Below, in pieces: positions 4,848 through 36,100 of a stretch of DNA of 64,000 nucleotides (the stretch's first letter is position 1; the number at the start of each line of letters is the position of its first letter). This DNA is from Lama guanicoe (taxonomy: Eukaryota). The stretch is taken from NCBI GenBank assembly GCA_013239625.1, contig MU055594.1, positions 16,062,445 to 16,126,444 on the forward strand. Direction: 5' to 3'. The notes beneath the pieces are model-generated. The model saw only the letters and a list, made by a program, of their open reading frames with translations. It did not search any database and had not been told where the DNA came from. Both the position numbers and the translations under genes were made by a program.

Positions 4848-4953
4848 ACACAGCAGCAGATTGCTGTCCAGGGCCAGCAAGTGGCCCAGACTGCTGAAGG
4901 GCAGACCATCGTCTATCAGCCAGTTAATGCGGATGGCACCATTCTCCAGCAAG
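4848..4953 (+). CDS. NFYA: NFYA exon (Q-rich activation domain)
   Basis: ttcctgcag|ACA...CAAG|gtaagt, 106 nt. Confidence 0.97.
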
Positions 4954-14539: not shown

Positions 14540-15110
14540 GCCGACCTTCTGCTCGTCCCCTCCCCGGAAGCCAGCGCGAGGGGCCAAAGCGCTGGGAAAC
14601 AGGTGGCGCAGAACCCGCCGCGGCTTTCGATTGACGCTGCTCCAAGCTAGCCCGCACTGATTGGCTGGTGGGAGGGACCCATCAGGGCTGTCGTTGAGGA
14701 TTGGCTGGTTCGCGGAGGAACCCTGTTTCCGGTAGCTCGGCGCGCAGCCCCGTCGCCGCCATGGCGACCGGCGAGCGGGTGGTGGCGCCGCCTCTGTGGC
14801 CCGTAGAGGCCCGGTTGGCGGCGCTGCTTCCTGACCTGCTGGTCTTCAGGAAGCCCCGGGGACCGGAACCTGAGCTCGCCACGGCCCAGGGCGTCCTTCT
14901 TGGCGTCCACGTGACGGGTGAGGGAGAGAGGAGGCCCGCTGCTCTCCCGACCTGCGGGAGGGGCAACCGTTGGGCCTCAGCTCGTAGGGGCCGCTGCGGT
15001 TATGGGCCTGGCTCCGGAGCGAGCAAAGCAAGCGCGGTTTCACCGCATTTCCCGCCGCCTCCGCCGAAAACCGAGGGTCATTTTCAGAGCAAGAAGCTAA
15101 CCTGACGTAG
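14540..15110 (+). promoter_or_regulatory. CpG island promoter of the ADCY10-like gene
   Basis: Abrupt GC/CpG-rich block. Reverse CCAAT boxes CTGATTGGCT (14657-14666) and GGATTGGCT (14698-14706); ETS-like CCGGAAG (~14564-14570); perfect Kozak GCCGCCATGG (14755-14764). Confidence 0.85.
14761..14917 (+). CDS. ADCY10-like exon 1 (start of C1)
   Basis: MATGERVVAPPLWPVEARLAALLPDLLVFRKPRGPEPELATAQGVLLGVHVT(G); donor G|gtgagg, phase 1. Confidence 0.88.
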
Positions 15111-18100
15111 CCCTGGAGTTCACTTCAGAGATGAGGAAATTGAGGCTCAGAAAAGGGAATGGACTTTTTCGGTGCCATACGGCACACTTTGAACCCAAGT
15201 GTTTTCCAATAAGTATTCCGCCTCGTCTAGTGATTTTATTCACTCAATTAATTCATTCTTTGAGTCCATAAGTATGTACCCGCCATTGTGCTAGGTGTTA
15301 AGAGACCTGGCAGCTACTAGGAGGGTCGTTCATTTAACAAATACTTAGGGAGTTTATGTCATGAATATGAAAATGAGTGATTCAGGTGCCTGTCCTCGAG
15401 GAGCTTACCATATGAGTTCTCCATGAAGCTTTAATCTTGTTACTGGTTTTTCTGCTCTTCATATCTGGGGAAATCCTTTCTCTTGGTCAGAGAGCCTTAA
15501 GAGGGTGTGGCGGGAAAGCAGTAGCTGCATTCCGATGGAAAAGGCTCTTGTGGGTGAATCTTCACCATCTACAGCTCCTGGAAACATGGGAAGGCTGGCC
15601 CTCTGGACTCCTAGAGGCAGCAGCAACCAGCCTGGCCCTGAGTACTTGCTAAGTAACACCATATTAAAGAGTAGAGAAATTACTCAAAAATGAAGAAGAA
15701 GAATTGTGAAATTACTCATATTAAAGAGATCTGCTTTCTTTACACTGTTCCAATGCGAGATTAAGGCCTAAAAGTTTGGGATTTGCAGCTAACAGTAATT
15801 TTTGCTTTGTTGGTCAGGGTTTACAGCATTAATGGACAGATTCAGCCTGAGCTGCAAGTCGGAACATGACATGGACAAACTGGCCCACATCTTCAGTTAT
15901 TACATTAGTGACATTGTGGAGCGTGAGTGACCCTTGTACGGGAACAAGGAAGTGTGGTGCTGGGCTTCTGAGGGTTTGTAACAGAAACAGGCCTGAGGTG
16001 CTTAAAACGGATACTGAAGGTCATTCCTTTAGTGTCACTCATCTTTTATTTCTTAAGGTTGCCACTGACAAGCTAGATCTTTCCATATACCTGCCATTCT
16101 ACCCAATCTCACATCCTATTGACCCAGTGTTCAGAAAGAGGAGGGGAAATGCTAATTTTAATTTTAACTCTGCATGTTTGTATTTTATTTTGAAATGAAG
16201 TATTCCTAAGGCTGTCTCTTTTAACAAAAATACAATGTGCTTCATGTGTGTATATCAGGTATAATTTACAACACACCTCATTTTTTTTTAAATTTTATTT
16301 TATTGAGGTATAAGTCAGTTTACATTGTTGTGTCAATTCATACCTTCCCATTTGGTTACTGCATTTTGATCCTGTGAAGTAGGAGTGAGTGTTTTATTTT
16401 CTGCCATGTATTAAGCTTGTGGATATTTGCCTAATCTAGGAGAAAAACTTATTTGTGCAGTAAACTTGTTTTGAGTACCTACTATGACATACACCGTAAT
16501 AGGTGCAGGAGGTACAGAAACCTACTTTTGAGGCGTTTTCAGTCTAGTTAGGTCTACCTAACAAATTATACTGGCTCTGCACCCTTTAGTACTAATGTAT
16601 GTACATTCCCTTCCTTTACTGACAGTGTCCCATAGTTACTCCATCATTCTGAGATTCACCAGAATAATTACCTTGTGGCCTCTCCTTAAGCCACATAAAG
16701 TGGCTGTTTGACTAATCCCTTACCACTGAGGATTCTGCCTGAGGTCTTTCAATGGACGTCATCAAGTTTAGGGGAAAGGGGGAGATAGAAATTATGTATC
16801 ATGTATGTATTATAACGGAGTTGCTGAGTACTAGAAATACATGGGAAAACAAGACACAGTACCTGCCCTCTTGTAGGTTCCAAGGAAGGAAGATAGTAAA
16901 CAAGATAATTTCAGAGTATGTAGTCTACAAAGGAAATAAATAAGGTGTTGTGGGAAAAAAGAAAAGAATTGTAGGGTGAAAGAGTTTCTGTATTAGGGTG
17001 GTCACAGGAGACATCTCTGAGAAGGTGCTGTGTAAGCTGAGACATAACGGATGTGAGGAACGCTGTGTGTGGAGCTAAGGGTAGAGCATTTCAGGCAGAA
17101 GAATGCCAAGTAAAAAGGTTCTGAGGTGGAGAAGGCTTGGCATGTTCTAGGAACTGAAAAGGCCAGTGTGGTTAGAGCATAGTTAGCAGGGAGAAGAGTG
17201 GCTTGAGGTGAGACTGGAGAGCATCAAGCTCCATAGAACATAGAAGTTTGGATTATTTATTTTTGTATGAAGGGAAACTGTTGAAAGACTCTAGCAGGGG
17301 AGTGATGTGATCTGATTTACATTTTTAAAGCTCATTTTAGCTGTCTCCTGGAGATAGAAACTATGTATCATGCATGTATTTATAATACCAGGAACTGCTG
17401 GGTACTAGAAATACACAGGAAAGTCAGACATGGTACCTGCCCTCATGGAGATTGTTTTATAGGGAACTGATGGAAGGTAGATGGTAAAACTGGACGCTGG
17501 AAGAGGCAATTGGAATAATTGTGGAGAGAAGTTAGAGATTTAGATGAGGTTAGTGGTTCTCTACTTTGGCAGCACGTTAGATAACCACTTAGGAGACTGT
17601 TAAAACTCCTGATGTCTAGACTTCACCCCATATCAGTTAAATCAATATCTTGGGGTAAGCCCAGGACTAAGGATTTTTCTTACAGACAATTTCAGTGTGC
17701 AGTAAAGGCTGAAACTATTAGTCTCAAGGTGTGGTAATGAAGGGAGCTGTATGGAGATGAACTGACTTGAAATATATTTTGCAGTTCAACAGACAGGATT
17801 TTCTAATGTATTGGATTTCCGTGGGAAATGGTGAGGAAAACAATTGTCAACTTTTTTGGCTTATGTAACCGAATTGAAGGTGATGTCACATACCGAGATG
17901 GGAAAGACTAGGCTTTGAGGAAGAAAGTCAAGGGTTCTATTTTTAATATATTGAGTTTGAGATGTTAGTAAGTCAGTCAAGTGAGGCAACGAAGTTAGCT
18001 GTGATTGAGCTTAGAGAATAGATCTTTAGAGATGAAAAGTGAATTGATGGCATAAAGATTTTATTTAAAGTTAAGAACTGATTGAGTCCACATGGGGGGA

Positions 18101-21100
18101 CTGTAAAGAACTCCAAGGGGAGATTGTGATTATGATTAGGGAGAAAGAACCTACAACAGCAACTGTGAAGCAGTCAGTCAGGTAGGCTATTTGGTGTTCC
18201 TGAAGCCAAAAGGGCAATAGTGTCTCTAGAAGGAGAGCGCTGCCCTAGTGGATTGAAAATAAAAGGTGTCAAATACAGTGATATCAGAAAAATACTAAAT
18301 ATAGCAAGATGAATGCTTTGGGTGGTTTTGATAATTTTAGTGAAGTGGTAGAGATGGAAGTTCAGATTGGAATAAACTGAGAATTTTTTTCTTTTGGCTG
18401 GGAATATAACAGAAAAATTGAGCTCATAGCTAGAGAAGAAGGCAGAGTCAAGAATAGGTGGGTTGATTTTGTTGTGTGTTTTTTTTTTACAAAGATATTA
18501 ATGGGAATGATGGCACAGAAAGAACATAAGGAAGGGAGTGAAGTTATTGAGAGGGTGAGGGGGACTAGGATCCAGAGCACAAATAGGGGGATGGCTTTGA
18601 AGATACCAAGAGGGCTTTCCTTCTGTTTTTAGAGAAGTTGGGTATAAGAACAGACATATCTGAAGAGAAGCTAGGGGAAAGGAAGAGGGAGTCTGAACCT
18701 TGGAATGAACAAATTGACCAGAAAAGATACAAAGGGAAACTCAGAAGGCCATTCTTTTCATCATATGTGATTCTGCCATGATCCAGCATATCTGATTTTG
18801 ATTCATTTTCCCCTCTTGCTTGATTTCAGATGTGCTCTGTTTTGGAGGGGATATCCTAAATATTACAGGTATTTCTCAGTTTTTCTGAATATTTAAAGCA
18901 CCCTGAAGTGAGGAAGACTGTATTTTAGGTGGAATTTGGCATGTTTATTCAGCATTGTTTGATTATTTTTCTAAGTGCTGGGCCCTGAGGAAACACAGAT
19001 GAGGAAGACAGTCTCTGCCTCAAAGGGTCTCCCAGTCTAATGGAAAAGCCTTGTCCATGTTAAGCTCCCATGTATTTTACAGTTTGTTCAGATTGACAGA
19101 AAAATAAGTGCCTTTAAAGCATTCGTGAGAAAACTTATGAGAAGCTTGGTCATTAATAACAGAAGCTACATATAGGAGAGGGAGAGGAGTCAAGAGTCTC
19201 CTATCTGGAGAACTCTTGTGATCATTTACAGCTGTGTGCCACAGAGCTGGCCTGTCTTTTCATTTAAACTTAATGAAACCACTTAAAATCTTAAAATTCA
19301 ACTTGAATGTAAACATATATTTTGTGGGCCTCTTAGCTAGTACCCCGCCCCTTCTGTTAGGATACTGGTGGGGAAAGAATTACCAAAAATAGCTTTAAAC
19401 CTTAGGAACATTTCAGCTTCTACTTAGTCATGTTTTTATATGCTCAATGGTTTTTTAAGATTAAGGCAGTATTTTAACCTAACATAATGTATAGGGCGAG
19501 AAACCTTGCGTGACACCTTGCATGATACCTTTTGCATTATTGAGGGTTCTGCCATGGCAAGTGAATTCAAATATTTGATCTCTGTCAGCCTGTCTTGTGT
19601 GTCTACAGGGAATGTGCTCCTTGCACTCTGGACAGTGGAACAGAATCAACTGAGTGACATCATTACCCTGGTGGCAAAATGCAGTCTGGAGATACAGGAG
19701 AAATTTGGCATCTGCCACACCAGAGAAGGGCAGGACCTGCAGTTAAAGATAGGTAGTAGCTATTAAGAGTGATAAGTTGGGGGGGGGGGGGGAAGGAAAC
19801 ATTAAAAATTTTAAAGATAAATGACAACTTGGAAAAAAAATATTTGCGACTCATATCATGTAGACAAAGGGTAAATTTTTCTATAGAAAGAACACCTAGA
19901 AGTTAAGAAAAGACTAACATTCTAGGAGAAAACTGAGCAAAAGAATGAATAAATAGCACATAAACAAAGAAGTCATCTCTTGTAATGTGTGAAAAAACGG
20001 TCAACTTAGTAATAAGAAAAATGCCAATTGAAAGTACATTGAGATCATTCCCTACCTACAAATATGGAAAAATTCAGATGCTGGACACACTGTCGGTGAG
20101 GCTGCGAGGAATAAGCCTTCTTACACAGTGTTGATGGGAGTCAGCAGTGGTGTAACTTCTGTAGAGGGTGATCCAGTCATCTCTACCCAGATTACAAATG
20201 CATTTATTCTTCAGCCCAGCAATCCCACTTCTGAACATTTATCCTATGGGTATACCTGACTGTGCATTAAATATCATGTATATAAGATTATTTATTGCAA
20301 TACAGATTGTGATAAAAGGTTGAAAACAATATCTATAGTAGACTGGTTAAATAAACAATAATATGTTTATTCACTGAGATTCTCTACAGCTTTAAAAAAA
20401 AAAGATGTTCTGATATAACAGTATCTCCAAAACATAGATGAGAAAAAGCAAGATGCAAAGCACTGTGTTTAGTATGCTACCTTTTATGCAAGTAGGAAAA
20501 ATAATAATTTTTCTTATTTATATTTGTATAAAGAAACACTGGAGAGATATATAAGAAACTAATAAAAGTCACCTATTAGGGGAAAATAGTGTAGATAGGT
20601 ATATAGATGGAATCAAGACTTTTTAATGTATATTCTTTATGTAGTTTGGTTTTTGAGCTATGTCATTGTATTACATAATCAAAAATATAATACAATACTA
20701 TAGGAAAAAAGCTGTACACAGAGGCGAAAGTTTCACCAGTGGCAGAGTCAGGATTGGAGGGTTAGCTCTAGACACAAAACTCCAGCTATTCATTTGTATT
20801 TTGAGGACTAGTCAGTAGTGAAGAATCATATTCTGAGTTATATGGCATCTATCCTGTCCTACCATCCTTTTTTAGTTCTTCTGATTTTTGTTTTATTGAT
20901 AGATAATTCATATCTGATACTGTACATAGACATATTTATACAATTTTGAAACCATCACCACAATCAAGATAATGAACATTCAGCACTCACTAAAGTTTCC
21001 TGTGCCCCTTTATAAACTCTCCCTCTCATCCTTCGCCTCCCCATCCCCAAGCAACCACAGCTCTCCTTTCTGTCATTAGAGATTATTTTGCATTTTTAAA

Positions 21101-24100
21101 GAATGTTATATAAGTGATATCATATAGTAGGTACTTTTNNNNNNNNNNNNNNNNNNNNNNNNNNNNNNNNNNNNNNNNNNNNNNNNNNNNNNNNNNNNNN
21201 NNNNNNNNNNNNNNNNNNNNNNNNNNNNNNNNNNNNNNNNNNNNNNNNNNNNNNNNNNNNNNNNNNNNNNNNNNNTATTTATTCACTTTTTGATCAGCAA
21301 TTGGGTTCTCAGGTTTTGACTTGCAAATAAAGCTGTTATGAATATCCATGTACAAGTCTTTGTATGGACATATCCATATGTTTCTCTTGGACAGACACCT
21401 AGACATGAAAGGTCTGGGTCATATAGTAGATGCGTATTTAACTTTTAGAGAAATTGCTAATATTTCTTCCAAAGTGGTTGTACTATTTTACATTTCTACC
21501 AGCAGTGTATGAAGGTTCCAGTCTCTTGCCAATATTTATCCTTGTCTGTCTGAAGAACTTTCTTTAAAATTTCTAATAATGTGGGTTTGCTGGAGATGTG
21601 TTAGTTCAGCTTTTGTGTGTCTGGAAAAAATTCACCCGTTTTTGAAAGATACCTCTACTAGGTATGGAATTCTAGATTGACAGGGGCTTCCCCCACCCCT
21701 TCTTATATTAAAGCTGTCATTCTACTGACATCTAGCTTGTAATGTTTCCAACAAGAAATCCTTATTTTTGTTTCTTTGTATATAATGTCTCTCCCTTTTC
21801 CACCCTAGCTGTTTTCAAAATTTTTTTCTCTGTCACTAATTTTAGGCAATCTGATTATCATGTGCCTTGGTACAGTTTTCTTCATCTTTCTTATGCTTGG
21901 GACCTATTGAGATTATTGGATCTATAGGCTTCTAGTTTTTGTAAAATTTAGAAAATATTCTGCCATTATTTCTTCAAATAATTTTTTCTCTCTTCCTCCT
22001 CCTCTGTCTAGCTACACACATATTAGGCTGCTTGAAATTGTCCAACTCACTGATGCTGTGTTTATTTTTTTTTGTCTTTTTTCTCCCTGTGTTTCATTTT
22101 TGGATGGTTTCTATCGCTGTGTTTTCAAATTTACAGATGTTCTCTTTTGCAATATCTAATTTGCCTTTGATCCAATCTAATGTATTTTTCATCTCAAGCC
22201 TGATAGTCTTCATCCATATGAAGATACCATATCTTCCATGTCCCTACTTGTTCAGTCTTTTCTCTAGGTTCTTGAATATGTAGAATATAGTTGCAGCTTT
22301 TTTAATGTCCTGATCTCCAAATTCTGTCATTTGTATTATTCTGCACTGGGCTTGACTGATTGATTTTTCTTCTAATTGTGAATCATATTTTCCCTTTTCT
22401 TTGCACACCTCGTAATTTTTGGTAGGTGCCAGACATTGTAGAATTTAACCTTGTTGAGTGTTGAATTTTTAAATATTTCTATAAATATTCTTAAACTTAG
22501 TTCTGGAATGTAGTTGACTTGATACTTTCAGGTTTTACTTTCAAACTTTGTTGGAGGGGCCAGAGCAGTGTTTAGTCCAGAGCTAGTTTTGCCCTGTTCC
22601 TGAGTCAAACCCCTTACGGGTACTGTACCTAATGTCCTGTGAATTATTAAGTTTGATACTCTGGCTAGTGGGAATAGGAACTATACCCGGCCCTGTCTGA
22701 TATTAAAGATTGTTCCCTCTAATCTTTTCAGGTGGTTCTTTCTGTAGCCTCAAGTTGTTTCCTCAGATTGATTCACTTATCAGTACTCAGCTAAAGACCG
22801 AGGGAGACCCAGTTCTCTGGAGTTCTCTCTGTCTACTCTCCAGTAGTCACAGTGCCCTACAAACTCTAACCACCTTGGCCCCTCAGATTCCTAGTTCTGT
22901 CTCCTCAACTCGGGGACCCCTCCAGGCTATACCTGGGTTTCTTCTCTCCAAGCTGTGTACTGGAAACTCTCTAGGCAGTGAGCTGGGGTATCAGAGGGTT
23001 CACCTTGTTTGTTTCTCATCTCTCAAGTATACTGTCCTTAATTACTTGATGGCCAGTATCTTGAGAACTGTTGTTTCTGTTGTTTCGTGTCTTTTTTCCC
23101 GGTTCCATGATTGTTCCAGGTGTTGTGGTAAATTTACTACCTGTTATTCTGTCTTGGCTAAAAGTATATGTCTCTGCCGTTCTTTTAAAACTACTTTTCG
23201 CTTGTTTTTAGTGTAGATTGGGTGACTGACTTACCTAAGGGCAGACTTCTCTTGGTTATAGGCATTTCTTTTCTGGCAAGCAAACCAGTTTTTCAGCCCT
23301 ATTAGCAGTAAGAAATCCAGGGCAAGAAAAACAGGAGGCAGAATAAAAGCGTATGGCAGAGCCCATGCCTGGTAAAATAGTGATTGTCTACTGTCTCAGT
23401 GCTGCTTACATGTGAGGAGGACTGGTGTGGTCAGCAGTTTCTGAGCATAACCATTTGGTCTCTGCCATCAGGACCTAGCTGTCCTTTAGAAGAACAATTT
23501 AGAAACAAAACTCTCAGACACCTAAGATCTCTTTTTTCTTCCCTCATACAACTCAGGCTTATTTGAATGTCTGTCTCTAGGTGTGTTTAAGACAAAGAAA
23601 TCTGGAGCAAGGTGTTACTTTTGAGATTGCGCTCACCTAATACTTCATGGCAATAACGAGATTGGCATGATGCATAAAACCATGTGAGGATTCCAGACCC
23701 CGCCCTTTGCAAAGTTTTCCAACTGAGTTTGGCTGTTCATCACGTGTCTCCTTTTTCCTGGATAGGTCTGTCTGCAGGACGGATTTCCCAGGTTATTGTT
23801 GGAGACGAGCAGCGACAGTACCTCTTGGTGATTGGGCGGGATGTGGACGGTGTCCAGTTAGCTCAGCGTTTGGCTCAGGCAAATGAGATTGTCTTATCCT
23901 GGAACTGCTGGAAGCTCTGTGAACAGTACATGTTTGAAGTGGAAATCATGAGGGAGGACGAAGCTGTGAAGGTAGGAGGCTGCTCACATCCATTGAATGT
24001 CCTGCAGAGGCCTTCCTACTACCCGGGGAAGTGCTCTGGTGGTACTCACACATGGCCTGACCAAACCAACAAATGTTGGAACTCTATTTTAGAGGGAGGC

Positions 24101-27100
24101 AGGGAATATTCTCCCAGGAAGATAGACGAGGCAGAACAGTAAGGCTGGAAAGATAAGAGATAAACAAGGGAGTTGGCATCCTCAGCCCCTCTGTTAAGGA
24201 ACCAAAGGTAATCCAGTTGGTGGGTGGGCACAGAATTGAGCAGTTCCTTTCTGTAGTTAAGAGATATGCGGATCAGTGACCCATTTGATTTCGATGAGCA
24301 TTTTGACAAGTGCCTGGATTACCTGCCACATTACCGGACAAGTGCTGGTAAGTTACTTGGCCCTTTGTATCCAATACCAAAATTTCAAAGATTAATTTTT
24401 CACATGCATGGAGACATTTTGTTTGTTTTCCTTTTCTCAGACATTCTAAGAACAGCCCTGGAGTTGGATCCAGACTCTGCACTTGAGCAAACCCTGAGGA
24501 AGCACATAATGAAAAGCCTTCTGAAGAAGGTTATTTTGTAGTTCTTGAGTCATCGTGTAGACTGTGTGTTTGTGTAAAGAATGTACATTTATATGTGATG
24601 ATCATTTGTACTGATCCAGTTCACCTCCTGCTGCCCATTTTAGTACCAGCAGATTTTCTCATCTGCATCAGTTACTACAGTGACATGTCTTACAAGTTTA
24701 GATTTCTCAGTCCTAGAAAGCAGAAGCCATATTTGTTTATGTTTGTCCCTCTAGAAGCTGGTACACTATAAACAGGTATAGAGTATATGCTTGGTAAATA
24801 TGTGTTGATTACATGTATCTGAATCTATGTGAATCCCTTAGTGAGCGATTTAATGGCTAGGAGAATTGGACATACCAAACTAAGTCTTAGAAAGGAAATA
24901 TAAAAGCATAGCAAATTTCATCAGTGAATTAGTTTTAAAGTCAAACAGTTTTAACTCCAAGTGTACTGGTTGGTATATCTTCCATACTGCTTGAACCTGA
25001 GTTTTAAGTTTTTTGTCTAACATCCATAAATTATTTTCTCATGTTTACCATGGAATATTGAATTTAAATGCCTAAGCATGATAGTGAAAGTTGAAGATAC
25101 AGACAAGGTAACTCACTGTGTCTTTGTAGATTGATGAAGGGCAGCCTATGGAGTATATATCTGAATTCCGTACCGTGACTACGGTTTTGGTCAGCCTAGA
25201 GCTCCGCAAGACAGAATGGATGTTGCATTTGTGTCATCTTATCCAGGAGGCTGCCTTATACATCTCCACAGTGATAGAGAAAGGGGGTGGCCAGCTGAGC
25301 CGGATCTTTATGTTTGAGAAAGTAAGTACAAAGGAATTTGACACATCAGCATTAAAGGTGAGTGAGGAATAATAGTCTTGTATCACCAGTTTATTTCTCA
25401 CATAACACAGGCATAAGTCAGATCCTCGGCTGCTTATTTTGTAGCAAGCTATATTACATTAAAACTTCAACTAGTAATAGTTAAGGAAAGAGATGTTCTA
25501 GTTAATTTAATTTTCAAGGTAACTAAGGGTTACTCTCCATATCCTTTTTAAATCTATCGTTGTTGAAAAAAAATCCTTCTGAAGGCATAAAGAATGTTTT
25601 TATGGCTCTATTAGTAAAGTATATGTAATCAAATCTTTCTCATAAATTTAGGAGCTTGAAAAAGAGCAGTATTGTAATATTTGACATTCTAGGTGAAGAA
25701 AATAGAAGCAGATAGAGTTAGCTTAAGTTGGACACTAAAAACTGAATTTTTGAAAAGTTCTTGACATCAGTTTTTCTCATGTTTTGAATTTCAGTTCTTT
25801 AAATAGCTAAATTAAGATTTTATTTCTTCTTCTTTTTAAAAAAATGTCCGTGTTGCTGTGGCCTAGCGTGCCCATTTCATGAATCTTATAGAACCCTACA
25901 TTCCTAACAGAAAACCAGCTAGGAAGAAATCTGGAAGGAGTCTGGGTTCACTAAGGGAAATTGGTGCAGTGGACGCAAGCCATATTTCTTCCCCAGATCA
26001 AGTTCCGTTTTCTTTCTCTGTCATCTATTTCAGGGCTACATGTTCCTCTGTGTTTTCGGACTTCCTGGGGATAAGAAGCCAGATGAGTGTGCACATGCCC
26101 TGGAGAGCTCCTTCAGCATCTTCAGCTTCTGCTGGGAGAATCTTGCTGAGACCAAGTGAGGAGGAAGGTGGGGCAGAGAGGAACTTCTCAGGCCCAGGGG
26201 GCTCTTCAGGCAAGGAAGGAGGCAGTAGCAAGTAGCAGGGGTTGAGGGCATCTGGAATCTGCCCAAAGGGGAGAGAGGGAACATTCTGAGGATAGTCAGA
26301 AAACAAAGTCTGTTAAGAATCACTGGATACAGAACTGTGTACCAGATACCCAGGGGAAATGAATGCAAGTTTCCATCCAGTGGGGTAGGAGAAGGGGAGG
26401 GACACAATATGCATAGCAAGATTCAAGAACATTGCGAAGGAACAAGCAGATGTGGAAATGAATATAAAAATAATGTATCTGTATGTGGAAGGAAGGCTGC
26501 CCGTCTGTGGGGAGGGGCGGCATGGGAAAACAAATTGTGGGGCAGTAACCTAGATAGGAGGGACCACAGCTGGTTAATGCTCTCCTTCTTGGCTTTCGCT
26601 TTTGGTCTTTCCCAGCCCTACTAATTTTTCTGGAATTCACACTGAACTGACCTCCTGCTCTTTTTATCTATAAAATAAGGAGTTGGATCAGAAAGCCTCT
26701 AAGTTCCTTTTCAGTATTACTGCCTTTTTAATGGTATCACTGAATTTTATTTATTTTTTTTTTTATAATGGTATCACTTTAGTAAGATATGCTGTTCCTT
26801 TGGGGGAATATCCACACAGGATTTGAGGACAGACGATCTGGGTTTCGTTACCAGCTCTGCTATACGCTAGTAACTTCTCTTCTGTGGCCTTAGTTTCCTC
26901 ACGTGTAAAAGAAGGATACAAATATTCACACTAGTAGCATATACTAAAGTATTCTATAAATGTTAAAGCATTGTGTAAATGTATGACACAGTTTTTATTC
27001 ATCTTGAATAAGTATGGCAAGCAAACAAATCTCTGACTTAGTGTTGACATTAGAAATAACTTTTCAAATCTATTCACTTTCCCCATAGTTTTCTAGTGAA

Positions 27101-30100
27101 AAAAAAAAAAGGCCATTTGAAAAATTCCAACCAATCTTATCATAGTTGCGCTAAGGAAAATGGAAATTTTCTATACTTCATTAGGATTAGGCTTTTGTAG
27201 GTGGGAGGGACCATTTTGCTCCTTTTGACTATCTCCCTAATATTCAGTACTGTGTACCCATCATGTGATGCAGACTGACAGCAGCTTCTGGCCTTTTCCA
27301 TTTTGAGCTCTAAACTAGACTTCTGGATCCAGAGAGTGGCACGTCTAGTGTCTGACTTAGAGGCTTCTGAGTGCATATTTACTCACTGTTGTTTTTCTGA
27401 TCCCCAGGCTTGTTTCCATCAGTATCACCAATGGACCAGTATTCTGTGGCATGGTTGGGGCAGTAGCAAGACACGAATATACAGGTAGAATAGGACATTG
27501 GACTGTTAGCTCTGTGACTTGTTAGAGGGGTGAAGGTGGAGGAGTTGGTTCAAAAATTCTCCATCCTTTTCTTTACTTCTCCCTGATACAGTTATTGGCC
27601 CAAAAGTGAGCCTTTTGGCAAGAATGATAACTGCTTATCCAGGTTTGGTGTCCTGTGATGAGGTAACATATCTAAGATCTATGCTACCTGCTTATAACTT
27701 CAAGAAGCTCCCAGAGAAAATGATGAAAAACATCTCCAACCCAGAGAAGATGTATGAATATCTTGGCCATAGAAGATGTATGTGAGTGTCATTATGTGAT
27801 ACTTCACTCCCATCTCTTTATAGTAGCAGGGCATAGGAATAATCAGTGCTTGATTATATGAAATTAGAAAGAAAGATGCTTCTAGTGCTGGCCTGCTAGA
27901 ATAGGAAACGTAAGTGGAGGGTTTCGTGTCTGAGAGCTTCAGGTTTTATGTGTCAGTGAGCTTCTTGCTGTCCAACAGGAAGAGGATCGCAGTAGCTCAC
28001 TAATCTAGATGTTCTTTTTCCTTTGTATACTTCACAACCTATTTACTTTCCTGAGCCTGGAGCAGTCAATGCTTTTTCTCCCCTTCCCCCACCAAAAACA
28101 TTTTTTTCACTTTTTAAAAAACTCTTGTACAGAACTCCGGACCTCTTTAGTTGTCTGAAATACTTGTTTATGAGGACAACTTGCCCTCTGTCTATTTAGA
28201 GATGTATTATCTATCCATCCCAATCTATTTTTAATTGAAATGTTTCCCTTTGTCCTTTTTTCCAGAATGTTTGGGAAGAGACATTTGGCCAGAGAGAGAA
28301 ATCAAAATCACCCATTGTTAGGTAAGTTTTCTTTTTTACCTTTAATCATATTTTTTTTCAGCTGTAGATGGTTACATATGATTTCAAAAACAAAATGCGA
28401 GACTAAATGCTTCTAAACTTTTATTAAAAAATAGATTTATTAGTGAATTTGTTAATTTTGAAGTGGATTTTCCATTTATTTTCCATGTTGAATGTTTAAA
28501 TTTCAAGTTGGGTCCTATCACTTTGCCTGAGAAGTGCCAACATTTAGTAAGAATCTTTGTAAGTCAGAGTTAAGCTATTGAGGTCTGATCTGCTTGTTGT
28601 TGATCATCTTAAGGGGGAAATTTCTCATTCTGAAATAGTAAAGATAGCACCGACACTGTTCCACCCATACTGTATATCCCGATCTTTGTTTTATCTACTT
28701 CTATTCGTCCATTATTTTCATGTGGTGGTGACAGACTTTAAACACTAAATTGTTACAATGGAAATTTTTACAAAAAGCTAAGAAGATATGATAGTCTCCA
28801 TGCCCATGTGCTGCCTAACTGTTCTAAATGTTATTACTTGGGCTTTGGAGCAAGCCCCTCAAGCCCAACACACATTTCTGTATCATGAAGAGTTGATTTT
28901 CTAGAAAGAGATGTGAAGGTTCATCAAAGAATGGGATTCTGTCAAAGATATTGGGGGAGAAGCCATTCTGAGAATCACCTTTGTAAATTAATTCAAATAA
29001 ATAAGTGTCTGCTAAAAACCACAGGTGTTAGGTGCTCCCTGTCTCTCTACAGACCGGGAGAAAGAACTAGAAGCCTTCCAAATGGCACAGCAGAGATGTT
29101 TGCACCTGAAGAAGGGACAAGCAGTTCTGTATGAAGGTGGAAAAGGCTATGGAAAAAGTCAGCTGTTGGCTGAAATAAACTTCCTGGCCCAGAAAGAAGG
29201 ACACAGGTAAAGACTTGTGCTATGCACCTATTTGTTTTGGGGCTCCTTTGCCTCGTTGGTGAGACTCTTGTGTTGTTAGATTCAGAATCATTGGGCTGGT
29301 GGAGTGAATAACCTCTCTGTGGATCAGGGGACTCCCAGTGACCACAGTAACATTCATCAGGGTGTTGCCACTGAAGCTGAAGGAAGCAGATTCCAAGCAG
29401 CGCTTCTATGCCATCCAGACCCTCATGGCTATCTTCTTTGAGATTGATACATGCCCAGCCTGTTACCGGCAAGAGTGCCTCTTCAAACAGCTCCATGGGA
29501 TGGTGGAAGAACCGCTTCACTGTCTTTTTAATGACCTCTTCTTCGTGAAGGTAATGAAGGCAGTAGCTCTCTGAACTGGATTATTTGTATTTTTGGTGGA
29601 TAGTTGGACCCAGGATTGTCTTCTAATCTAACACCTGTTGGCCATATGTATATGCATCGTTTAAGAACAGATAGTTAGGAGTGGCAGGATCAAGATTTGA
29701 AAAGCCTTTGACACCAAAACCCAGGTTTTTTCCTTTTTTGAGAAGAGTGGATTCTAGGACTGACTCTCAGTCTTGCTAGCTGTATGTCTTGGCACAAATC
29801 ACTTAGCCTCTCTGAGCCTCAGTTTTTTTTCAACGGTGAAATGATGATGATAGTACTTTATATGGGTTTTGCATGAATTTTGTAAAGGATGTAATATATA
29901 AGAGATTGCATTGTAAATGTGAAAGTGCTAAAATTTGTCCAGGTGATACTGACCAGTCGAGCATCTCCAACAATTACATCCACGTGTTCTTGAGTCAATT
30001 GCAGTGTTCTGTTTTTTAACCTTACCTGCCCTACCCCAGGCCATGGAGTATGTCACTTGAACTAGCATCTGAATCTCAAAAGCTTCCAGTGGTCTAGGAT

Positions 30101-33100
30101 TTATGCGGTCTCCAGCAGCGAGTAGGCTAAGAATTCCTTGGTCCACAATTCCATTTATTCATCTTCCATCACTTCTCCTAATCTACCCCAGCATGCAGGA
30201 TGTTGTATTGAGTGAAAAATAGGAAAAATGAAAATTTGTCCAATCCTTCAGCATAGCACTTGCTTAAGCCAGGCCTTACCTGGGACCCTGGCCAAAGCAG
30301 TCAAGTAATAGGCTCACTTTGGCTCTCAGGTCCATGATAGCTCATGTGCCAGCCTGACACAGTGTTGGAGACATCCACTGCGATTCTTTCTCACAAGTGT
30401 CATGCATACATTCATTATAGTATACTTGGAAGCATGGGGGTACTGGAGTTGTCCAAATTGACATTACTAAGTCTCACCTGTCACTTTACTCCTTAGTCAT
30501 GATCCTTTAAAGATTTGCCAGAGTCTGGTATGGAAAGGAGCGCGCTCTCTCTAACTACCAGTGGACTTTCAGTCTGCCCTCTGAACTGTATATGGATGTT
30601 GGATTAGTATTTGTAACCCTATGCCTAGTCCTGTGGAAAGCTATTCTCACTCAAAATAGAATCATTTTCTGTTCCCTTTTGAGAACCTGTATATTTTTAT
30701 TAGATTGTTATTTTGAAAGATAATATCTGAATAATTTTCCCGGTCAGTTTCCCTTATCCTTCAGAGTTTCACACATGGATGACCTGGCCAGACAAAAGAA
30801 GGTTAAAGCATGTTTTTTTCAAGTGCTTCAGAAGGTGGGTACTTTTGCTACATGCCGTCAACTCTTAACATGTGCAGATAGTTTATGCTCATTTTAATCT
30901 ATCTCTATCATACCTTGACTTAGGCATTTCTTCATTGTTTGTATCTATCTTTTTAAAAAATTTTGTATATATATATTTAGATTTTTTTTAATTTTATTAA
31001 TTTTTTTGGTGGGGAGGAGGTATTTTTTTAAAGTGTATATGAGTGGGGCATGGTAACTGGTAGTTTTAGCAAGCACTCCTAGGTGATTCTCATATGCAGC
31101 CTGGTCTGGAAGCTGGTTTAAAATACTATGAATTCCCACAGTTTGAAGCTTTTGCCAAAATGAAATATTTGAAAGCTTCATATTTGATTTGGAGAATATT
31201 TTGATGCTCATTTCATGTTTCAGTTAGAGTATTTTCTTGTTCAAAGAAACTCGGTAGATTTCTTTAGGAATTAGATATACAGGCTATATTTTATATTTAT
31301 GAAGTAAAATATTACCTGGACTTAGGATACATTTTACTCTGAAAATCCCAGCCTATGTTGACATTTTACTTAAAATTGTTGATGGGAAATTTATGGTAGA
31401 TTTCAAAATAAAGTGACTTCATTTCTAATCAGAGGTTGTCATTGTTTCCTTGCTGTTATTTCCAGGCAGTGAGGGAAACACCGCTGATATTCCTCATTGA
31501 CGAGGCCCAGTATATGGATGCAGCTTCCTGGGAGTTTTTGGGAACATTGCTCTCCAGTGTGCCCATCATCATGGTGATGACATTGACCCCCACCTTCGCC
31601 CTGTGTGGCTGGGCCCAGCACTTCCTGCAGAGCCCTCAGGCCATCCTTGTACCCATTTTGAAGTTGGCAGAGACCTCACTGCTGAGAATGGCATGTTGGG
31701 AACTGGGGGTGGTGAGCATCCCCCAAGAGCTACAGATGTGAGTGGCTAGGACCAGCTGGGCACTTCATTAAGGGAGGAGCCGGTGCCATAATATAAGTGA
31801 GAAGGCTCAGGTCTCACCAAAGTTGAGGGAGAGAATGACGTTAGCGACCATGGTGAGGCCCAAAACTAGATTTAAACGTAGACAGTCTCCTAGTACCCAG
31901 TAAAGGACTATCTCCCTGGGCCGTTCATCCAGGTTTTCACAGGTCTGTTAGGACCTGGATGACTTGCTTTACATGTCCATTATGTGTGGTCAGGCCAGTT
32001 TTTGTCAGGCCCTTTAGCAAGGGGATGTTAGTTCCTTTTAACATCAATAGAAGGAAGATAGTTAAGAGAAAAGTTACTGCCAAAATACATTTCAAAACCA
32101 ATCAGAAACTTTTTTTAACATTTTTATGCCAAGGCTTCCTTCTGTTAGTGTATATCATCAAGAACTGACTTTAACAACCGAAGAAATATTCCTCAGTATG
32201 AAATACCCTTATGCTTGGCTTTCTTCAAGTGGACATCTTTAGTCAGTGGACATCTTTAATCCCCTACTTACCTCTCTACAGCTACCTTCTCCGCAGGTGC
32301 TTTGGAAACCCCCTTTACTGTGAGGTCTTATGCCAGGACCTTCTCTCTAAGAACATATTGCTCTTTCATGACCTCCAAAAGGAGGAGGTGGAGACTAGCA
32401 AGTGGGAGACCCTCTCAGGTAAGCTGAGTACCCCAGGGTTCTACCCTGGTCCTGCTGCTGGAGTTCATTCTTGACCATGGCATCACCTGGCCCTTATGAA
32501 GCATGTGTCTATTCCCTGCTGGCATCATAAGCAAGGTTAGGCCTTCCTGGCTAAGTGTACTATACAGATAATATGTAGTTATGTTGAAAACACTAAATCC
32601 CTGCCTCAGGTAAAGTAATTGAGTCAATCTACTTTAGTTCCTTTTTGAGCAGCCCAGGAGGTGAAGATAGGAAAATAGGATTTATAAACATCAGAGTCCA
32701 CTAGAAAGGATTGATAAACTTGAGAGTCCAATAGAGAATTGCACGTTACTGATGAGAAGGGTGACGTGGTAAATCTGAATGAGGAATGGAAGAAGGGAGG
32801 AGGAAAGAGAGAGAAGTATGTGTAAAATCCAGAAAGGCATCCTGGAGCTGTGAGGTAGCAGAATCAAGGGCTGTTGGAAGGTAAACAGGAAGGGTGAGAA
32901 TGTTGGATACCATGTGGTACAGAAAATGTTGTTCATTTCTAAGAGAAAATTAGAGAACCGGCAGGATGGGTGGGTAAACCACTTTAAATCTTATAGCTCC
33001 TTTCATCTTAATCCTTTTAGTTTCTTGGCTAAATTCTTGTATTTTTGTATCTTTAAAACCACAGTCTCTAAGCATGGCATTTTCCTCAGTCGTAGTTTTC

Positions 33101-36100
33101 TTTTCCTACAGCCAATGCCATGAAATCCACAATGTATAGTATTTCTCCTGCCAGCTCTGAAGACCAGGACCTTTATGTATGTACAGTCAAGGATGATGTA
33201 AACTTGGATACAGTGCTTCTCCCACCATTATTAAAAGGCAGGTCCCCTAAAAACCTCAAGTAAACCAATTACAGATATCATTGCACTTAGTAATTTGGTG
33301 GTTGATTGAGTATAGGTCTCTCATTATCATGCTAGCTTTATTTCTTTAAAAAAGAAACCTGCCTTCCAGAAATAAATTTTGGCACTACCAGAAGAGCTCT
33401 TAAAGACTTGTAATGCTATCTGAGTAATGATTTACTTAAGTAAGCCCACTGTTCTCTTTGAGGCTGACTGATTATCTGGAAAAGTTTTCTAGTTATTTAA
33501 TAAAAATTATGTCCTGAGTTTCCCTTTGTGCATGTTCCTGTGCTGGAGGAGACAGTGAACAAGGGAGACAATGTTACTGAAGTTTAAGAAAATCCATGGT
33601 GGTAGTGAGGAGACAGTGTTACGCACATAGCAGGAATTTCATAAAAAGAGTACAAAGAAAGTTTATAATGAATGATGAGATAAAGAGTAAAGAAGCCATC
33701 AGAATTGGGTAGATATAATTAGAGAGGATCTTCTTCTTAGAGACAAGGAGGTTTTGGGGTTTTTTTTTTTTCCTTAATATTCTATTCAGGTATTTGGTGG
33801 GCAGGGTACTTTGCTAACCTTCTTGAGGAAAATTATGATGAATAAGTAGGCCTTCAAGTCAAATATGTTCTTGCTGAGAATATAGGATATGCATATGAAA
33901 CAGCAGTACAGAACACCTTGGTAATTAAGAGCCAGGACTCTGGGGTCAGAAAAACCTGGGTACCATTGGCTCCTCCACTTACTGGCTGTGAAACCTTATA
34001 TAAACTTAGATCTAAGTCTTAGTCCTCTCATCATTCAAATGGGGTTAATGATAGTTCCTACCTCATGGGGTTGGTTGAGGATTAAATCAAATAAATCATG
34101 GTGCATAATACATATTCAATGAATGTTAGCTATTATAAGCTATTCACTCTGGTGGTTTTAGGTCCATCTGGACAGTTATATACCTACAGCCGTGATAGGC
34201 CACACTTAGCATTGGCTTTACTAACTTAGAAGCATGCAGGTCAGGAAACAGCACTCTAGCAGAACAGCAGCAAGTGGTTTTCTTCAGTGGGAATCCCCAC
34301 ATCAGTTTCCACTGCTATCTCTGGAGCCTCAAGGAATAGCTTAGATGTGATGGAATGAGGTCACTCATCTCTCCTGGATGAGTGCTTGGATGCCCCATTT
34401 CCCAGCTAGGAACTGGCATCTCTTATAATAGCCATCTAGGCATAGCCTGCAGGCCCTGCCAGGAGTGTGACCTGTCACAAGAATTACTATACCCAGGGAA
34501 GCCCAAAGCTGTGGCTTACCACCAGGTATTTGTACCTTATTCACAGTTCTCCTAGTCCAAATTCAACTTCCTATGAGGGATCACTCTTAGCATAAGCAAT
34601 GTTACCTGGTAACTCAGCTGGCATTCTAATTTTATCAGGGTTCTGGGAAAATAGCTAGAAAGTTAATCCACATGGAAAGAAAAAGCTAAAATGAATCGTT
34701 CAGTCAGCAAAGCCTTGGTCTAAATGAAAGGCCAAAGCTAAATTGCGAAAGGCCATATAAGTTATAAGAGTATTTAAGAAGGGTGCTGGCATGATTATAT
34801 TTGTACATGAGGCGTATAATCCAACCACTAGTTAGTGTGTCTTAGGGCTAAGAATGAGAGGAACTTGGAGATGTTCAAAACAGAGTAGTATGGTGATCCA
34901 GGTGAAAATGACTGCTTATAGTAAAATTGTTTGGGAAGAATCATATTCAAGATTATTTAGAAAGATAATGAGCAGATGACTGGTGGTTGTGAGGGAGAGG
35001 AAAAAGTTTAGAATTATTCCAAGATTTTGGGCTTGGTGGCTTACTGGTCAGAATATGGAGAGATTTAGTAAAATACTTTAGTTAATTCAGATCTTTACAG
35101 TTATTTGAATTCTGGGACCTGGAAGCCAACCTCAGTGTTTAGTTGAAAGTAGGAGGAAAATGGGAAGAATTGTTAGTACAGGATTCAGAACACAACTTCA
35201 GGTCTACCAACAAAAGGTTTTGGTGACCATGAGGAGTACAGTTTCAGTGTTTTGGTGAAAACCTGATTGTTGGTTGAATAATAAATGGGGAATGGGGACA
35301 AAAGAGGACATGGAGATAAGGCTCTTTCAAGAGATTTGGCTGAGTGAAAAAGGAGTGGGCAAAAAGCAAGCCTTTTTTTTAAATGAACACAATGTATTAT
35401 TAGCACAATATATTCTACGTTTGTAGAAAGCTTATTCATTGCTTTTTTTTTTTCCTTCAGAAATAGCAGTGAACCAACTGGATCAATTGAACCCAGAGGA
35501 ACAGTTGCTGGTTAAGTGTGCAGCAGTCATCGGTCACTCCTTCCACATAGATCTACTGCAGCACCTCCTGCCTGGCTGGAGTGAAAATAAGCTACTTCAG
35601 GTGCTGAGGGCTCTTGTGGACATACACGTGCTCTGCTGGTGCAGCAAGAGCCAAGAGCTTCCTGCTGAGCCAATATTAGTGCCTTCCTCTATCGAGATTA
35701 TTGAACAAACCAAAGAGAAGAGAAAGCCAGGTGAGGAAGAGCTATTTATTCCCTTGTTCTCAGGCCCAAATAGAGAGCTTTGGGTGAGGGTATCTGTGTT
35801 CAGAAAGAGCATCCGTATCATAGATCACAGGCCCACTCTCTTAAAGCTTATGTCTAAGAAATTGGGAAAAGTGCTTATTTTAATCATGGAGGAGCCATGG
35901 TTATAGTAAATGAATGGCCTTTGTTTTTTAGAGTTGTCTTAATTTCAAGAATTCTAGTTCCTTGTTAACCCCATGTGTTAAGTATTTGTGTTTTGATTTT
36001 TGGTTCAAAAAATATTGCCATAGTCTTTTATTGGCTTTTTGGGATAAATAAAAAGAAAAAAAGATGAACTATTTCTAATTTTAGAAGGTTATAAGGAAGT

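What the first reader, a model, noticed from the sequence alone, without database searches (positions are those of the whole stretch)
14908..27623. Cyclase active site is specifically dismantled: predicted pseudo-cyclase
Established (human sAC numbering): D47 and D99 bind the two catalytic metal ions, and K144, K334, T405, N412 and R416 contact substrate or transition state. Seen here at the aligned positions: VDISG becomes VHVTG (D47->H, CAC 14908-14910); KFAGDA becomes NITGNV (D99->N, AAT 19611-19613); KVNLAAR becomes KVSLLAR (N412->S, AGC 27609-27611); K334->R (CGG 25301-25303). K144 (AAG 19746-19748), T405 (ACA 27481-27483) and R416 (AGA 27621-27623) are kept, and the surrounding fold residues are well conserved. 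Inference: the protein should not make cAMP by the class III two-metal mechanism but may still bind a nucleotide. It could be a sensor, a scaffold or a regulator of true sAC. An automatic 'adenylate cyclase 10-like' label would hide this.
Basis: partly seen in the sequence, partly recalled or inferred. Interest (0 to 1): 0.92.

Follow-up and report, generated by a model that had tools for sequence, protein, structure and literature searches.

The report
Conserved dead-cyclase paralog of soluble adenylyl cyclase
This is an intact, 32-exon second copy of the soluble adenylyl cyclase gene, kept by most mammals but a pseudogene in humans, in which both metal-binding aspartates were replaced long ago, so it almost certainly cannot make cAMP yet is still conserved.

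Summary

- **Assembly gap:** 21139-21275 lies inside intron 4. Exons 4 and 5 join in frame without it.
- **Gene:** it spans 14761-49013 on the + strand. It has 32 coding exons, 1591 codons, no in-frame stop and canonical splice sites. It is 97.8% identical to dromedary 'adenylate cyclase type 10-like'.
- **Locus:** it lies between NFYA and a TREM-like Ig exon, which is where papers place human ADCY10P1.
- **Not private decay:** H47 and N99 are fixed in 30 of 30 therian orthologs, and monotremes also have H47. The same species keep a true ADCY10 with every catalytic residue.
- **Age:** the copy groups with a turtle copy, so the duplication predates the amniote split.
- **Constraint:** the dead cyclase domain evolves as slowly as the live one (p-distance 0.095 against 0.109).
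- **"Specifically dismantled":** only moderately supported, because 28% of ultra-conserved sAC sites changed anyway.

One paper from 2008 dismissed the locus as a pseudogene. I could not test activity, nucleotide binding, dN/dS or splicing in RNA.

The parts
14761..49013 (+). Whole coding region of the ADCY10-like gene: 32 coding exons, 4773 nt (1591 codons) plus a TAA stop
   Evidence: Ungapped tblastn with dromedary P0098 and phase arithmetic at each junction. There are 0 in-frame stops. Of 31 introns, 30 are GT-AG and 1 is GC-AG. 1534 of 1569 full codons are identical to the dromedary protein.
14761..14917 (+). Exon 1. ATG in the context GCCGCCATGG. H50 (CAC 14908-14910) stands at the position of sAC D47, the first metal-binding Asp.
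15818..15922 (+). Exon 2: the GFTALMD.. phosphate-loop segment, with G50/F51/T52 of sAC kept.
18830..18868 (+). Exon 3: VLCFGGDILNIT. It carries N at the K95 position (AAT 18859-18861), I96 and T97.
19609..19752 (+). Exon 4. N102 (AAT 19611-19613) stands at the position of sAC D99, the second metal-binding Asp. K147 (AAG 19746-19748) corresponds to K144 and is kept.
   Evidence: PDB alignment.
21139..21275 (.). Assembly gap (137 N) inside intron 4, which spans 19753-23765. It is not coding.
   Evidence: The exon 4/5 junction is in phase and colinear with the dromedary, koala and human sAC proteins.
23766..23971 (+). Exon 5: end of C1. Q (CAG 23855-23857) stands at the position of sAC R176.
24257..24529 (+). 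Exons 6 (24257-24347) and 7 (24441-24529): the C1-C2 linker.
25130..25321 (+). Exon 8: start of C2. R (CGG 25301-25303) stands at the position of sAC K334.
   Evidence: PDB alignment.
26034..26155 (+). Exon 9: C2.
27408..27484 (+). Exon 10: C2. T (ACA 27481-27483) corresponds to T405 and is kept.
   Evidence: PDB alignment.
27592..27781 (+). Exon 11: C2. S414 (AGC 27609-27611) stands at the position of N412. R (AGA 27621-27623) corresponds to R416 and is kept.
   Evidence: PDB alignment.
28266..49010 (+). Exons 12-32: the C-terminal STAND-type NTPase and helical-repeat part. Walker A GGKGYGKS lies at 29136-29159 and Walker B LIFLIDEAQ at 31484-31510.
   Evidence: (weak AAA_16/AAA_22 hit on exon 16). 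Orthologs carry PF13191/PF13401.

Best explanation
The window holds the complete, intact camelid ortholog of the mammalian 'adenylate cyclase type 10-like' gene. By position this is the counterpart of the human pseudogene ADCY10P1.

It is an old paralog of soluble adenylyl cyclase. It keeps the whole architecture: C1-C2 cyclase homology domains, a STAND P-loop NTPase and helical repeats. Its C1 domain has lost both aspartates that hold the two catalytic metal ions (D47 to His, D99 to Asn). N412 to Ser, K334 to Arg and R176 to Gln are changed as well.

**Shown:**
- the substitutions;
- their fixation across therians;
- the intact reading frame;
- protein-level constraint equal to that of true sAC;
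- coexistence with a canonical ADCY10 in the same species.

**Inferred from the established two-metal mechanism of class III cyclases:** the protein cannot cyclise ATP and is a pseudo-enzyme.

**Inferred more weakly:** the remodelled and then frozen pocket serves as a ligand-binding or conformational input to the still-intact STAND NTPase switch, rather than as a catalytic site. The frozen residues are H47, T97, N99, V100, Q142 and L143, alongside the retained G50, F51, T52, K144, T405 and R416.
For: - **Substitutions.** Codons and alignments.
- **Intact gene.** 32 exons, 1591 codons, no stops, canonical splice sites, 97.8% identity to dromedary P0098.
- **Distribution.** Orthologs named 'adenylate cyclase type 10-like' occur in about 45 mammals of all major clades, including koala, echidna and platypus.
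- **Fixation.** H47 and N99 are present in 30/30 therians. Monotremes have H47 with G or R at position 99.
- **A live copy alongside.** True ADCY10 with D47, D99, K334, T405, N412 and R416 is present in the same species, including dromedary P0225.
- **Separate clade.** The paralog clade, including a turtle copy, has SH-aLRT support of 100. An independent turtle duplication is rejected (p-AU 0.005). The turtle and mammal copies share S49T, A97T, R142Q and V143L.
- **Constraint.** In 11 matched therian species, C1-C2 p-distance is 0.095 for the paralog and 0.109 for true sAC. For the rest of the protein it is 0.205 and 0.231.
- **Residue roles.** Taken from PMC12867704 Table 1 and PMC12250328.
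- **NTPase motifs.** Walker A and B are intact.
- **Synteny.** An NFYA exon lies upstream (Pfam CBFB_NFYA, E 2.6e-14). Human ADCY10P1 is described next to NFYA and in the 6p21 TREM2 region.
Against: - No biochemical evidence exists, so loss of activity is a prediction.
Constraint therefore rests on protein distances and on the intact frame.
Four RNA-Seq runs hold 43-46% of the stretch's sampled words. Exons make up only 23% of the stretch, so intron sequence is present too.
- Pocket-adjacent sites are only slightly more conserved than other sites within the paralog (0.950 against 0.939). A ligand-binding role is therefore not demonstrated.
- The gene has been lost or damaged in some lineages. 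[quoted passage not shown] Wolf and Old World monkey predictions lack exons. The function is therefore dispensable in some mammals.
Confidence: 0.8

Rival explanations
1. This is a decaying or unitary pseudogene in this lineage, as the 2008 literature assumed for the second sAC locus. On this view the active-site changes are neutral decay.
For: - PMC2532759 states that the second sAC-related locus 'appears to be a pseudogene'.
- The human copy is annotated as ADCY10P1, with untranslated transcripts.
- Some predicted orthologs (wolf, mangabey, baboon) lack exons.
Against: - The window has 1591 codons with no stop or frameshift, and 31 canonical introns.
- The same holds for predicted proteins in about 45 mammals.
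- H47 and N99 are invariant in 30/30 therians, not drifting.
- The C1-C2 domain evolves no faster than that of true sAC.
Confidence: 0.03
2. It is still an active nucleotidyl cyclase, or another nucleotide-processing enzyme. His47 and Asn99 would act as non-canonical metal ligands, for example for Mn2+ or Zn2+.
For: - His and Asn can coordinate transition metals (general chemistry).
- K144, T405, R416 and the GFT loop are kept.
- H47 is invariant from monotremes to placentals, which suggests a role for that side chain.
- Active salmon sAC tolerates Arg at the N412 position.
Against: - Both carboxylates are invariant in all 34 true sACs. They are the defining metal ligands of class III cyclases (PMC12867704 Table 1; PMC12250328).
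- Monotreme copies carry G or R at position 99, which cannot bind a metal.
- K334 and N412 are changed as well.
Confidence: 0.07
3. The protein is functional, but its cyclase domain is only a structural scaffold. It binds no ligand, and the function lies in the STAND NTPase and helical-repeat part.
For: - Walker A and B are intact.
- Pocket-adjacent sites are only marginally more conserved than other C1-C2 sites in the paralog (0.950 against 0.939).
- The adenine-side residues A97T and F296L are changed.
Against: - C1-C2 is the most conserved part of the protein (p-distance 0.095 against 0.205 for the rest).
- The replacement residues at the former active site are themselves frozen (H47, T97, N99 in 30/30; G45, V100, Q142, L143 in 29/30).
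Confidence: 0.3
4. The gene is simply this species' true ADCY10, and the odd residues come from a misalignment or an assembly error.
For: Some database records name orthologs 'adenylate cyclase type 10' without '-like' (for example Camelus bactrianus P0100 and rabbit P0110).
Against: - Dromedary has a separate ADCY10 (P0225) with all catalytic residues.
- The two genes form separate clades.
- C1-C2 of the paralog and of true sAC differ at 54% of sites within a species.
- The locus is flanked by NFYA.
- The alignments are gapless at all motifs.
Confidence: 0.01

Closest known systems
Soluble adenylyl cyclase ADCY10 (human catalytic core, PDB 4CLF and related entries)
   Same: - Same architecture: C1-C2 tandem cyclase homology domains, then a P-loop NTPase and helical repeats.
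- About 46% identity over C1-C2.
- 95 of the 132 sites invariant in true sACs are kept, including G50, F51, T52, K144, T405 and R416.
   Different: - D47H, D99N, N412S, K334R and R176Q.
- AGD loop changed to TGN, and FDKG to FEKG.
- Different locus (next to NFYA).
- Compact gene, about 34 kb.
- Predicted to lack cyclase activity and the Arg176-Asp99 bicarbonate switch.
Human ADCY10P1, the 'second sAC-related locus' of PMC2532759
   Same: - Same position by synteny. The window has NFYA upstream and a TREM-like Ig exon downstream. Papers place ADCY10P1 in the NFYA enhancer region and in the 6p21 TREM2 region.
[quoted passage not shown]
   Different: - The human copy is treated as a non-coding pseudogene, enhancer RNA or lncRNA.
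- The copy in this window has an intact 1591-codon frame.
- Orthology was inferred from synteny and from the literature only. No human DNA was fetched or compared.
Degenerate second site of class III cyclase dimers (forskolin site of transmembrane cyclases; bicarbonate site of sAC)
   Same: A cyclase-fold pocket that has lost its metal-binding aspartates and is used for regulation instead of catalysis. This rests on established knowledge and on PMC12250328 for the sAC bicarbonate site.
   Different: Here the normally catalytic site is degenerate, and the pseudo-symmetric site has also lost R176. Neither pocket looks canonical.
Bacterial cyclase-STAND proteins, such as the mycobacterial Rv0386 type (recalled, not tested here)
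   Same: A class III cyclase domain is fused to a STAND or AAA NTPase.
   Different: These are single-domain homodimeric bacterial enzymes, some of them active.

Membership tests
Class III nucleotidyl cyclase (catalytically competent) | Homology to the cyclase homology domain, in tandem C1-C2 of the sAC type | tested here: met
   Exons hit human sAC chains (best E 4.9e-16). Orthologs carry PF00211. Dromedary residues 1-470 are 46% identical to pig sAC (E 8.5e-140).
Class III nucleotidyl cyclase (catalytically competent) | Two metal-binding aspartates in C1 (sAC D47 and D99) | tested here: not met
   H (CAC 14908-14910) and N (AAT 19611-19613). Both are fixed in 30/30 therian orthologs.
Class III nucleotidyl cyclase (catalytically competent) | Asn-Arg pair in C2 (N412, R416) | tested here: inconclusive
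   N412 is S and R416 is kept. Active salmon sAC has Arg at the N412 position (PMC12867704), so this residue is not strictly required.
Class III nucleotidyl cyclase (catalytically competent) | Base-recognising Lys334 and Thr405 | tested here: inconclusive
   K334 is R here, and R or Q across therians. T405 is kept.
Class III nucleotidyl cyclase (catalytically competent) | Formation of cAMP or cGMP | not testable with these tools
   Needs an enzyme assay.
ADCY10 (true sAC) orthogroup | Falls in the ADCY10 clade and is the only sAC gene of the species | tested here: not met
   There is a separate clade for the '-like' genes (SH-aLRT 100). Dromedary has its own ADCY10, P0225.
ADCY10-like / ADCY10P1 orthogroup | Colinear, near-identical to annotated ADCY10-like proteins | tested here: met
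   97.8% identity over 1569 full codons to dromedary P0098, with all 31 junctions matching.
ADCY10-like / ADCY10P1 orthogroup | Position between NFYA and the TREM-like genes | tested here: met
   A CBFB_NFYA exon lies at 7464-7745 on the + strand (E 2.6e-14). A V-set-like ORF lies at 58317-58814 on the - strand (E 3.6e-5, below Pfam's cut-off). The human arrangement is taken from PMC9107640 and PMC5940861 only.
Pseudo-enzyme (conserved, catalytically dead homolog) | Catalytic residues lost while the fold and frame are kept under purifying selection | tested here: met
   The residue changes are listed above. The frame is intact. C1-C2 p-distance is 0.095 against 0.109 for true sAC in matched species.
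Pseudo-enzyme (conserved, catalytically dead homolog) | Expressed as mRNA and protein | tested here: inconclusive
   Four RNA-Seq runs of one reproductive-system study hold 43-46% of the stretch's sampled words.
Pseudogene (non-functional relic) | Disabling mutations: stops, frameshifts or broken splice sites | tested here: not met
   There are 0 stops in 1591 codons, CDS length is divisible by 3, and of 31 introns 30 are GT-AG and 1 is GC-AG.

The most novel reading that the evidence does not exclude
Most mammals carry a second, purifying-selected sAC-derived STAND protein. Its former catalytic pocket was rebuilt around an invariant His/Asn pair and senses a ligand (a nucleotide, a metal ion or protons) without making cAMP. 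That input would feed the intact NTPase switch. [quoted passage not shown]
Probability: 0.35. Interest if true: 0.8.

Novelty: new variant of a known kind. Interest (0 to 1): 0.62.

Why it matters
sAC is treated as a single-gene system. It is a drug target for male contraception and for lowering eye pressure.

The only published remark I found on the second locus calls it a pseudogene (PMC2532759). The comparative data here argue otherwise. In most mammals, including livestock and companion animals, it is an intact gene whose dead cyclase domain is as constrained as the live enzyme's.

Three consequences follow:

1. **Annotation.** 'Adenylate cyclase type 10(-like)' labels imply an activity that the protein should not have.
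2. **Function.** The family could show what the poorly understood STAND/TPR part of sAC-type proteins does when it is uncoupled from catalysis.
3. **Model choice.** Mouse and human are the wrong models. Rabbit, pig, cattle or camelids would be needed.

Tried and rejected
- **Pfam on single exons** gave no cyclase hit because the exons are too short. This was replaced by PDB sequence alignments and by full-length orthologs.
- **PDB search with exon 1 alone** found nothing. D47 was placed by multiple alignment instead.
No ortholog DNA could be fetched, so there is no dN/dS.
- **Joined spliced protein.** It was never built, searched or folded. All searches were made exon by exon, by reference, or with database proteins.
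- **Structure prediction.** It was not run. The spliced model has no reference, and every ortholog on hand with a complete C1-C2 either exceeds the 1200-residue limit or, like platypus (1053 residues), carries an insertion and R at position 99. At about 46% identity to solved sAC, a fold model would add little.
- **Complex prediction.** It was not used, because I make no binding claim.
- **Literature.** One search was swamped by 'sac-like' and was uninformative.
- **Earlier findings.** The word search was blank.
- **AU test B.** The test of a duplication within the mammal stem was started but not finished.
- **Human sequence.** No human contig was fetched. Human sAC entered only as PDB chain alignments, and as one protein id (P0193) returned and not used.
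Full report
**1. Observation.**
- Exon 1 reads ...GVLLGVHVT|gtgagg, with CAC at 14908-14910.
- Exon 3 ends GGDILNIT-G. Exon 4 starts with AAT at 19611-19613 and then reads VLLALW.
- Lys (AAG 19746-19748), Arg (CGG 25301-25303), Thr (ACA 27481-27483), Ser (AGC 27609-27611) and Arg (AGA 27621-27623) are all as described.

Exon-by-exon searches of solved structures give gapless alignments to the human sAC catalytic core, in 4clf numbering:
- Exon 4 residues 2-47 align with 100-145, so N stands for D99 and K for K144.
- Exon 8 aligns with 277-340, so R stands for K334.
- Exon 10 aligns with 382-405, so T stands for T405.
- Exon 11 aligns with 406-465, so S stands for N412 and R for R416.

Exon 1 alone is too weak for a PDB hit. 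A 59-protein MAFFT alignment, with the window's exons added as fragments, places H under D47.

**2. The assembly gap.** The N run at 21139-21275 lies in intron 4 (19753-23765). Exon 4 ends and exon 5 begins in the same codon, at phase 1, with GT and AG sites. The 17 residues across the join are identical to the dromedary ortholog. They are also colinear with human sAC ..KIG|LAAG... Nothing coding is missing. Three further N runs lie upstream of the gene.

**3. What the gene is.** A whole-library profile search with exon 5, followed by two word-indexed searches, returned two sets of full-length proteins.
- One set, 'adenylate cyclase type 10-like', covers about 45 mammals. It includes Afrotheria, Xenarthra, carnivores, ungulates, whales, bats, eulipotyphlans, lagomorphs, squirrel-type and geomyoid rodents, strepsirrhine and some other primates, koala, echidna and platypus.
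- The other set is true ADCY10 from the same species.

The window is closest to Camelus. Ungapped tblastn and phase arithmetic at each junction give:
- 32 coding exons from 14761 to 49010;
- 4773 nt, or 1591 codons, followed by TAA;
- no in-frame stop;
- 30 GT-AG introns and one GC-AG intron;
- 97.8% identity to dromedary isoform P0098.

The window therefore comes from a camelid or a close relative. I did not determine the species. I never built or searched a joined protein.

**4. Locus.**
- Upstream on the + strand is an exon encoding the NF-YA DNA-binding domain (7464-7745; Pfam CBFB_NFYA, E 2.6e-14).
- Downstream on the - strand is an Ig V-set-like ORF (58317-58814; E 3.6e-5, below Pfam's cut-off).
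- Papers place human ADCY10P1 in the NFYA enhancer region (PMC9107640) and in the 6p21 TREM2 region, with multi-exon untranslated transcripts (PMC5940861).

I therefore take the window's gene as the intact counterpart of ADCY10P1. This rests on synteny and on the literature. No human DNA was fetched.

**5. Are the changes private decay?** No.
- In 30 therian orthologs with complete C1-C2, H47, N99 and T97 are each present in 30/30.
- G45, V100, Q142 and L143 are each present in 29/30.
- S412 is present in 27/30 (G in koala, T in sengi).
- Position 334 is R in 21 and Q in 9. Position 176 is Q in 27 and R in 3.
- Echidna and platypus have H47, with G and R respectively at position 99, and both keep K334. 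Platypus also keeps N412, while echidna has S.
- All 34 true sACs, from catshark to mammals and including dromedary P0225, have D47, D99, K144, R176, K334, T405, N412 and R416.

**6. Age.**
- An IQ-TREE tree of 50 N-terminal regions puts the mammalian '-like' genes together with a second turtle copy (P0010, P0012, P0184). That clade has SH-aLRT support of 100 and is separate from mammalian and sauropsid true ADCY10.
- Forcing all sauropsid sequences together costs 37.4 log-likelihood units (p-AU 0.005). Two caveats apply. The group was named after the tree had been seen, and long branches are involved.
- The turtle copies share S49T, A97T, R142Q and V143L with the mammalian paralog. They have E at position 47, and two of the three still have D99.

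The duplication therefore most likely predates the amniote split. Remodelling of the active site was stepwise. The 97 and 142-143 segments and position 47 changed first. D99 was lost on the mammalian stem, or separately in monotremes and therians. N412 and K334 changed later.

**7. Constraint.**
- In 11 therian species with both genes, mean pairwise protein distance in C1-C2 is 0.095 for the paralog and 0.109 for true sAC.
- In the rest of the protein it is 0.205 and 0.231.

The dead cyclase domain is thus the best-conserved part of the protein, and it is as constrained as the live enzyme's domain. Together with a 1591-codon open frame in many lineages, this excludes neutral decay. The monotreme copies are much more divergent (0.458 against 0.193).

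**8. How specific is the dismantling?**
- Of 468 C1-C2 sites, 132 are invariant in the 34 true sACs.
- The paralog consensus differs at 37 of these (28%), and 20 of the 37 are themselves fixed.
- Five of the eight named catalytic or regulatory residues are changed (binomial p = 0.044).
- Changes at invariant sites are about three times more frequent within 3 residues of a named residue (15/32 against 22/100, Fisher p = 0.012).

The active site was hit more than the background, but not exclusively. Within the paralog, pocket-adjacent sites are only slightly more conserved than other sites (0.950 against 0.939). In true sAC the figures are 0.976 and 0.915.

**9. Mechanism.** Residue roles come from PMC12867704 Table 1 and PMC12250328.
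- Asp47 and Asp99 coordinate the metal ions.
- Lys144 receives pyrophosphate.
- Arg416 contacts the alpha-phosphate.
- Lys334 reads the base through a water molecule.
- Thr405 contacts adenine.
- Arg176 and Lys95 bind bicarbonate, and Arg176 forms a salt bridge with Asp99.

With His and Asn in place of the two carboxylates, two-metal catalysis should fail. With Asn99 and Gln176, the Arg176-Asp99 bicarbonate switch cannot exist. This is inference from mechanism, not measurement.

Active salmon sAC has Arg at the N412 position and Asn at the K95 position. N95 is also the state of the non-mammalian true sACs in my alignment. K95N is therefore probably ancestral rather than a loss.

The phosphate-side residues are kept, and the replacement residues are frozen. 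Walker A (GGKGYGKS, 29136-29159) and Walker B (LIFLIDEAQ, 31484-31510) are intact in the window and in its orthologs. My working model, at roughly 40% confidence, is a non-catalytic pocket that binds a ligand or fixes a conformation and feeds the STAND NTPase switch. A purely structural role for the domain is the main alternative.

**10. Expression.** Four RNA-Seq runs from one study labelled 'reproductive system' hold 43-46% of the sampled words of 23700-29600. Exons make up only 23% of that stretch, so intron sequence is present too, and splicing is not shown. I worked beside those places afterwards.

**11. What is known.**
[quoted passage not shown] It cites a 2007 thesis.
- Other papers treat ADCY10P1 as a non-coding RNA.
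- Searches for the '-like' name, and for ADCY10 together with 'pseudoenzyme', found nothing relevant. A search that included 'pseudocyclase' was swamped by 'sac-like'.
- The library lacks most subscription journals, so absence of a paper is not proof.

Automatic annotation already lists the proteins. What appears to be new is the reading of the gene as an ancient, constrained, catalytically dead paralog.

The gene is a new variant of a known kind: a pseudo-enzyme derived from a class III cyclase. It is real, conserved and under-studied, and its function is unknown. I score it 0.62.

Noticed in passing
window 4788-5021 (+) and 7464-7745 (+): These are 3' exons of NFYA: a Gln-rich ORF, and an exon with the CBFB_NFYA domain (Pfam E 2.6e-14). 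The N runs at 3460-3604, 4490-4661 and 6219-6422 fall in this upstream gene region.
   Followed up: partly
window 58317-58814 (-) and 54557-54928 (-): An Ig V-set-like ORF (Pfam V-set, E 3.6e-5, below the cut-off) and a Pro/Ser-rich ORF lie on the minus strand downstream. By position they may belong to a TREM-like gene. This was not verified.
   Followed up: partly
window 18859-18861 and 23855-23857: This bears on the sibling note on bicarbonate residues. N at the K95 position is also the state of the non-mammalian true sACs in the alignment (turtles, crocodilians, gecko, frog, newt, gar, shark) and of active salmon sAC. Lys95 therefore looks like a mammalian sAC gain, not a loss in the paralog. 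R176Q is derived, but R is kept in rabbit, kangaroo rat, gopher and Old World monkey copies.
   Followed up: yes
window 29136-29159 and 31484-31510: Walker A (GGKGYGKS) and Walker B (LIFLIDEAQ) of the STAND NTPase are intact. They are conserved in the paralogs from monotremes to placentals.
   Followed up: partly
window 33238-33239 / 35459-35460: Intron 18 is the only GC-AG intron of the gene. The junction reproduces the dromedary protein 17/17.
   Followed up: no
proteins P0010, P0012, P0184 (turtles): Turtles carry a second sAC-like gene that groups with the mammalian paralog. It has E at position 47 and Q at 334, and two of the three copies still have D99. It may be an intermediate stage of active-site loss. 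No such copy appeared among the crocodilian or squamate hits listed; no bird sequence appeared among them at all.
   Followed up: partly
proteins P0148 (wolf), P0146 and P0159 (mangabey, baboon): These predicted orthologs lack the exon 3-4 or exon 1-2 segments and score lower. This could be lineage-specific decay in canids and catarrhines, or it could be annotation error. It would fit the 2008 remark that the dog locus looks like a pseudogene.
   Followed up: no
proteins P0164, P0015 (echidna, platypus): The monotreme paralogs are far more divergent from therian ones than true ADCY10 is (C1-C2 p-distance 0.458 against 0.193). They also have an unusual amino-acid composition.
   Followed up: no
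window 23700-29600: Four RNA-Seq runs of a single study labelled 'reproductive system' hold 43-46% of this stretch's sampled words, which is more than the exons alone would give.
   Followed up: partly
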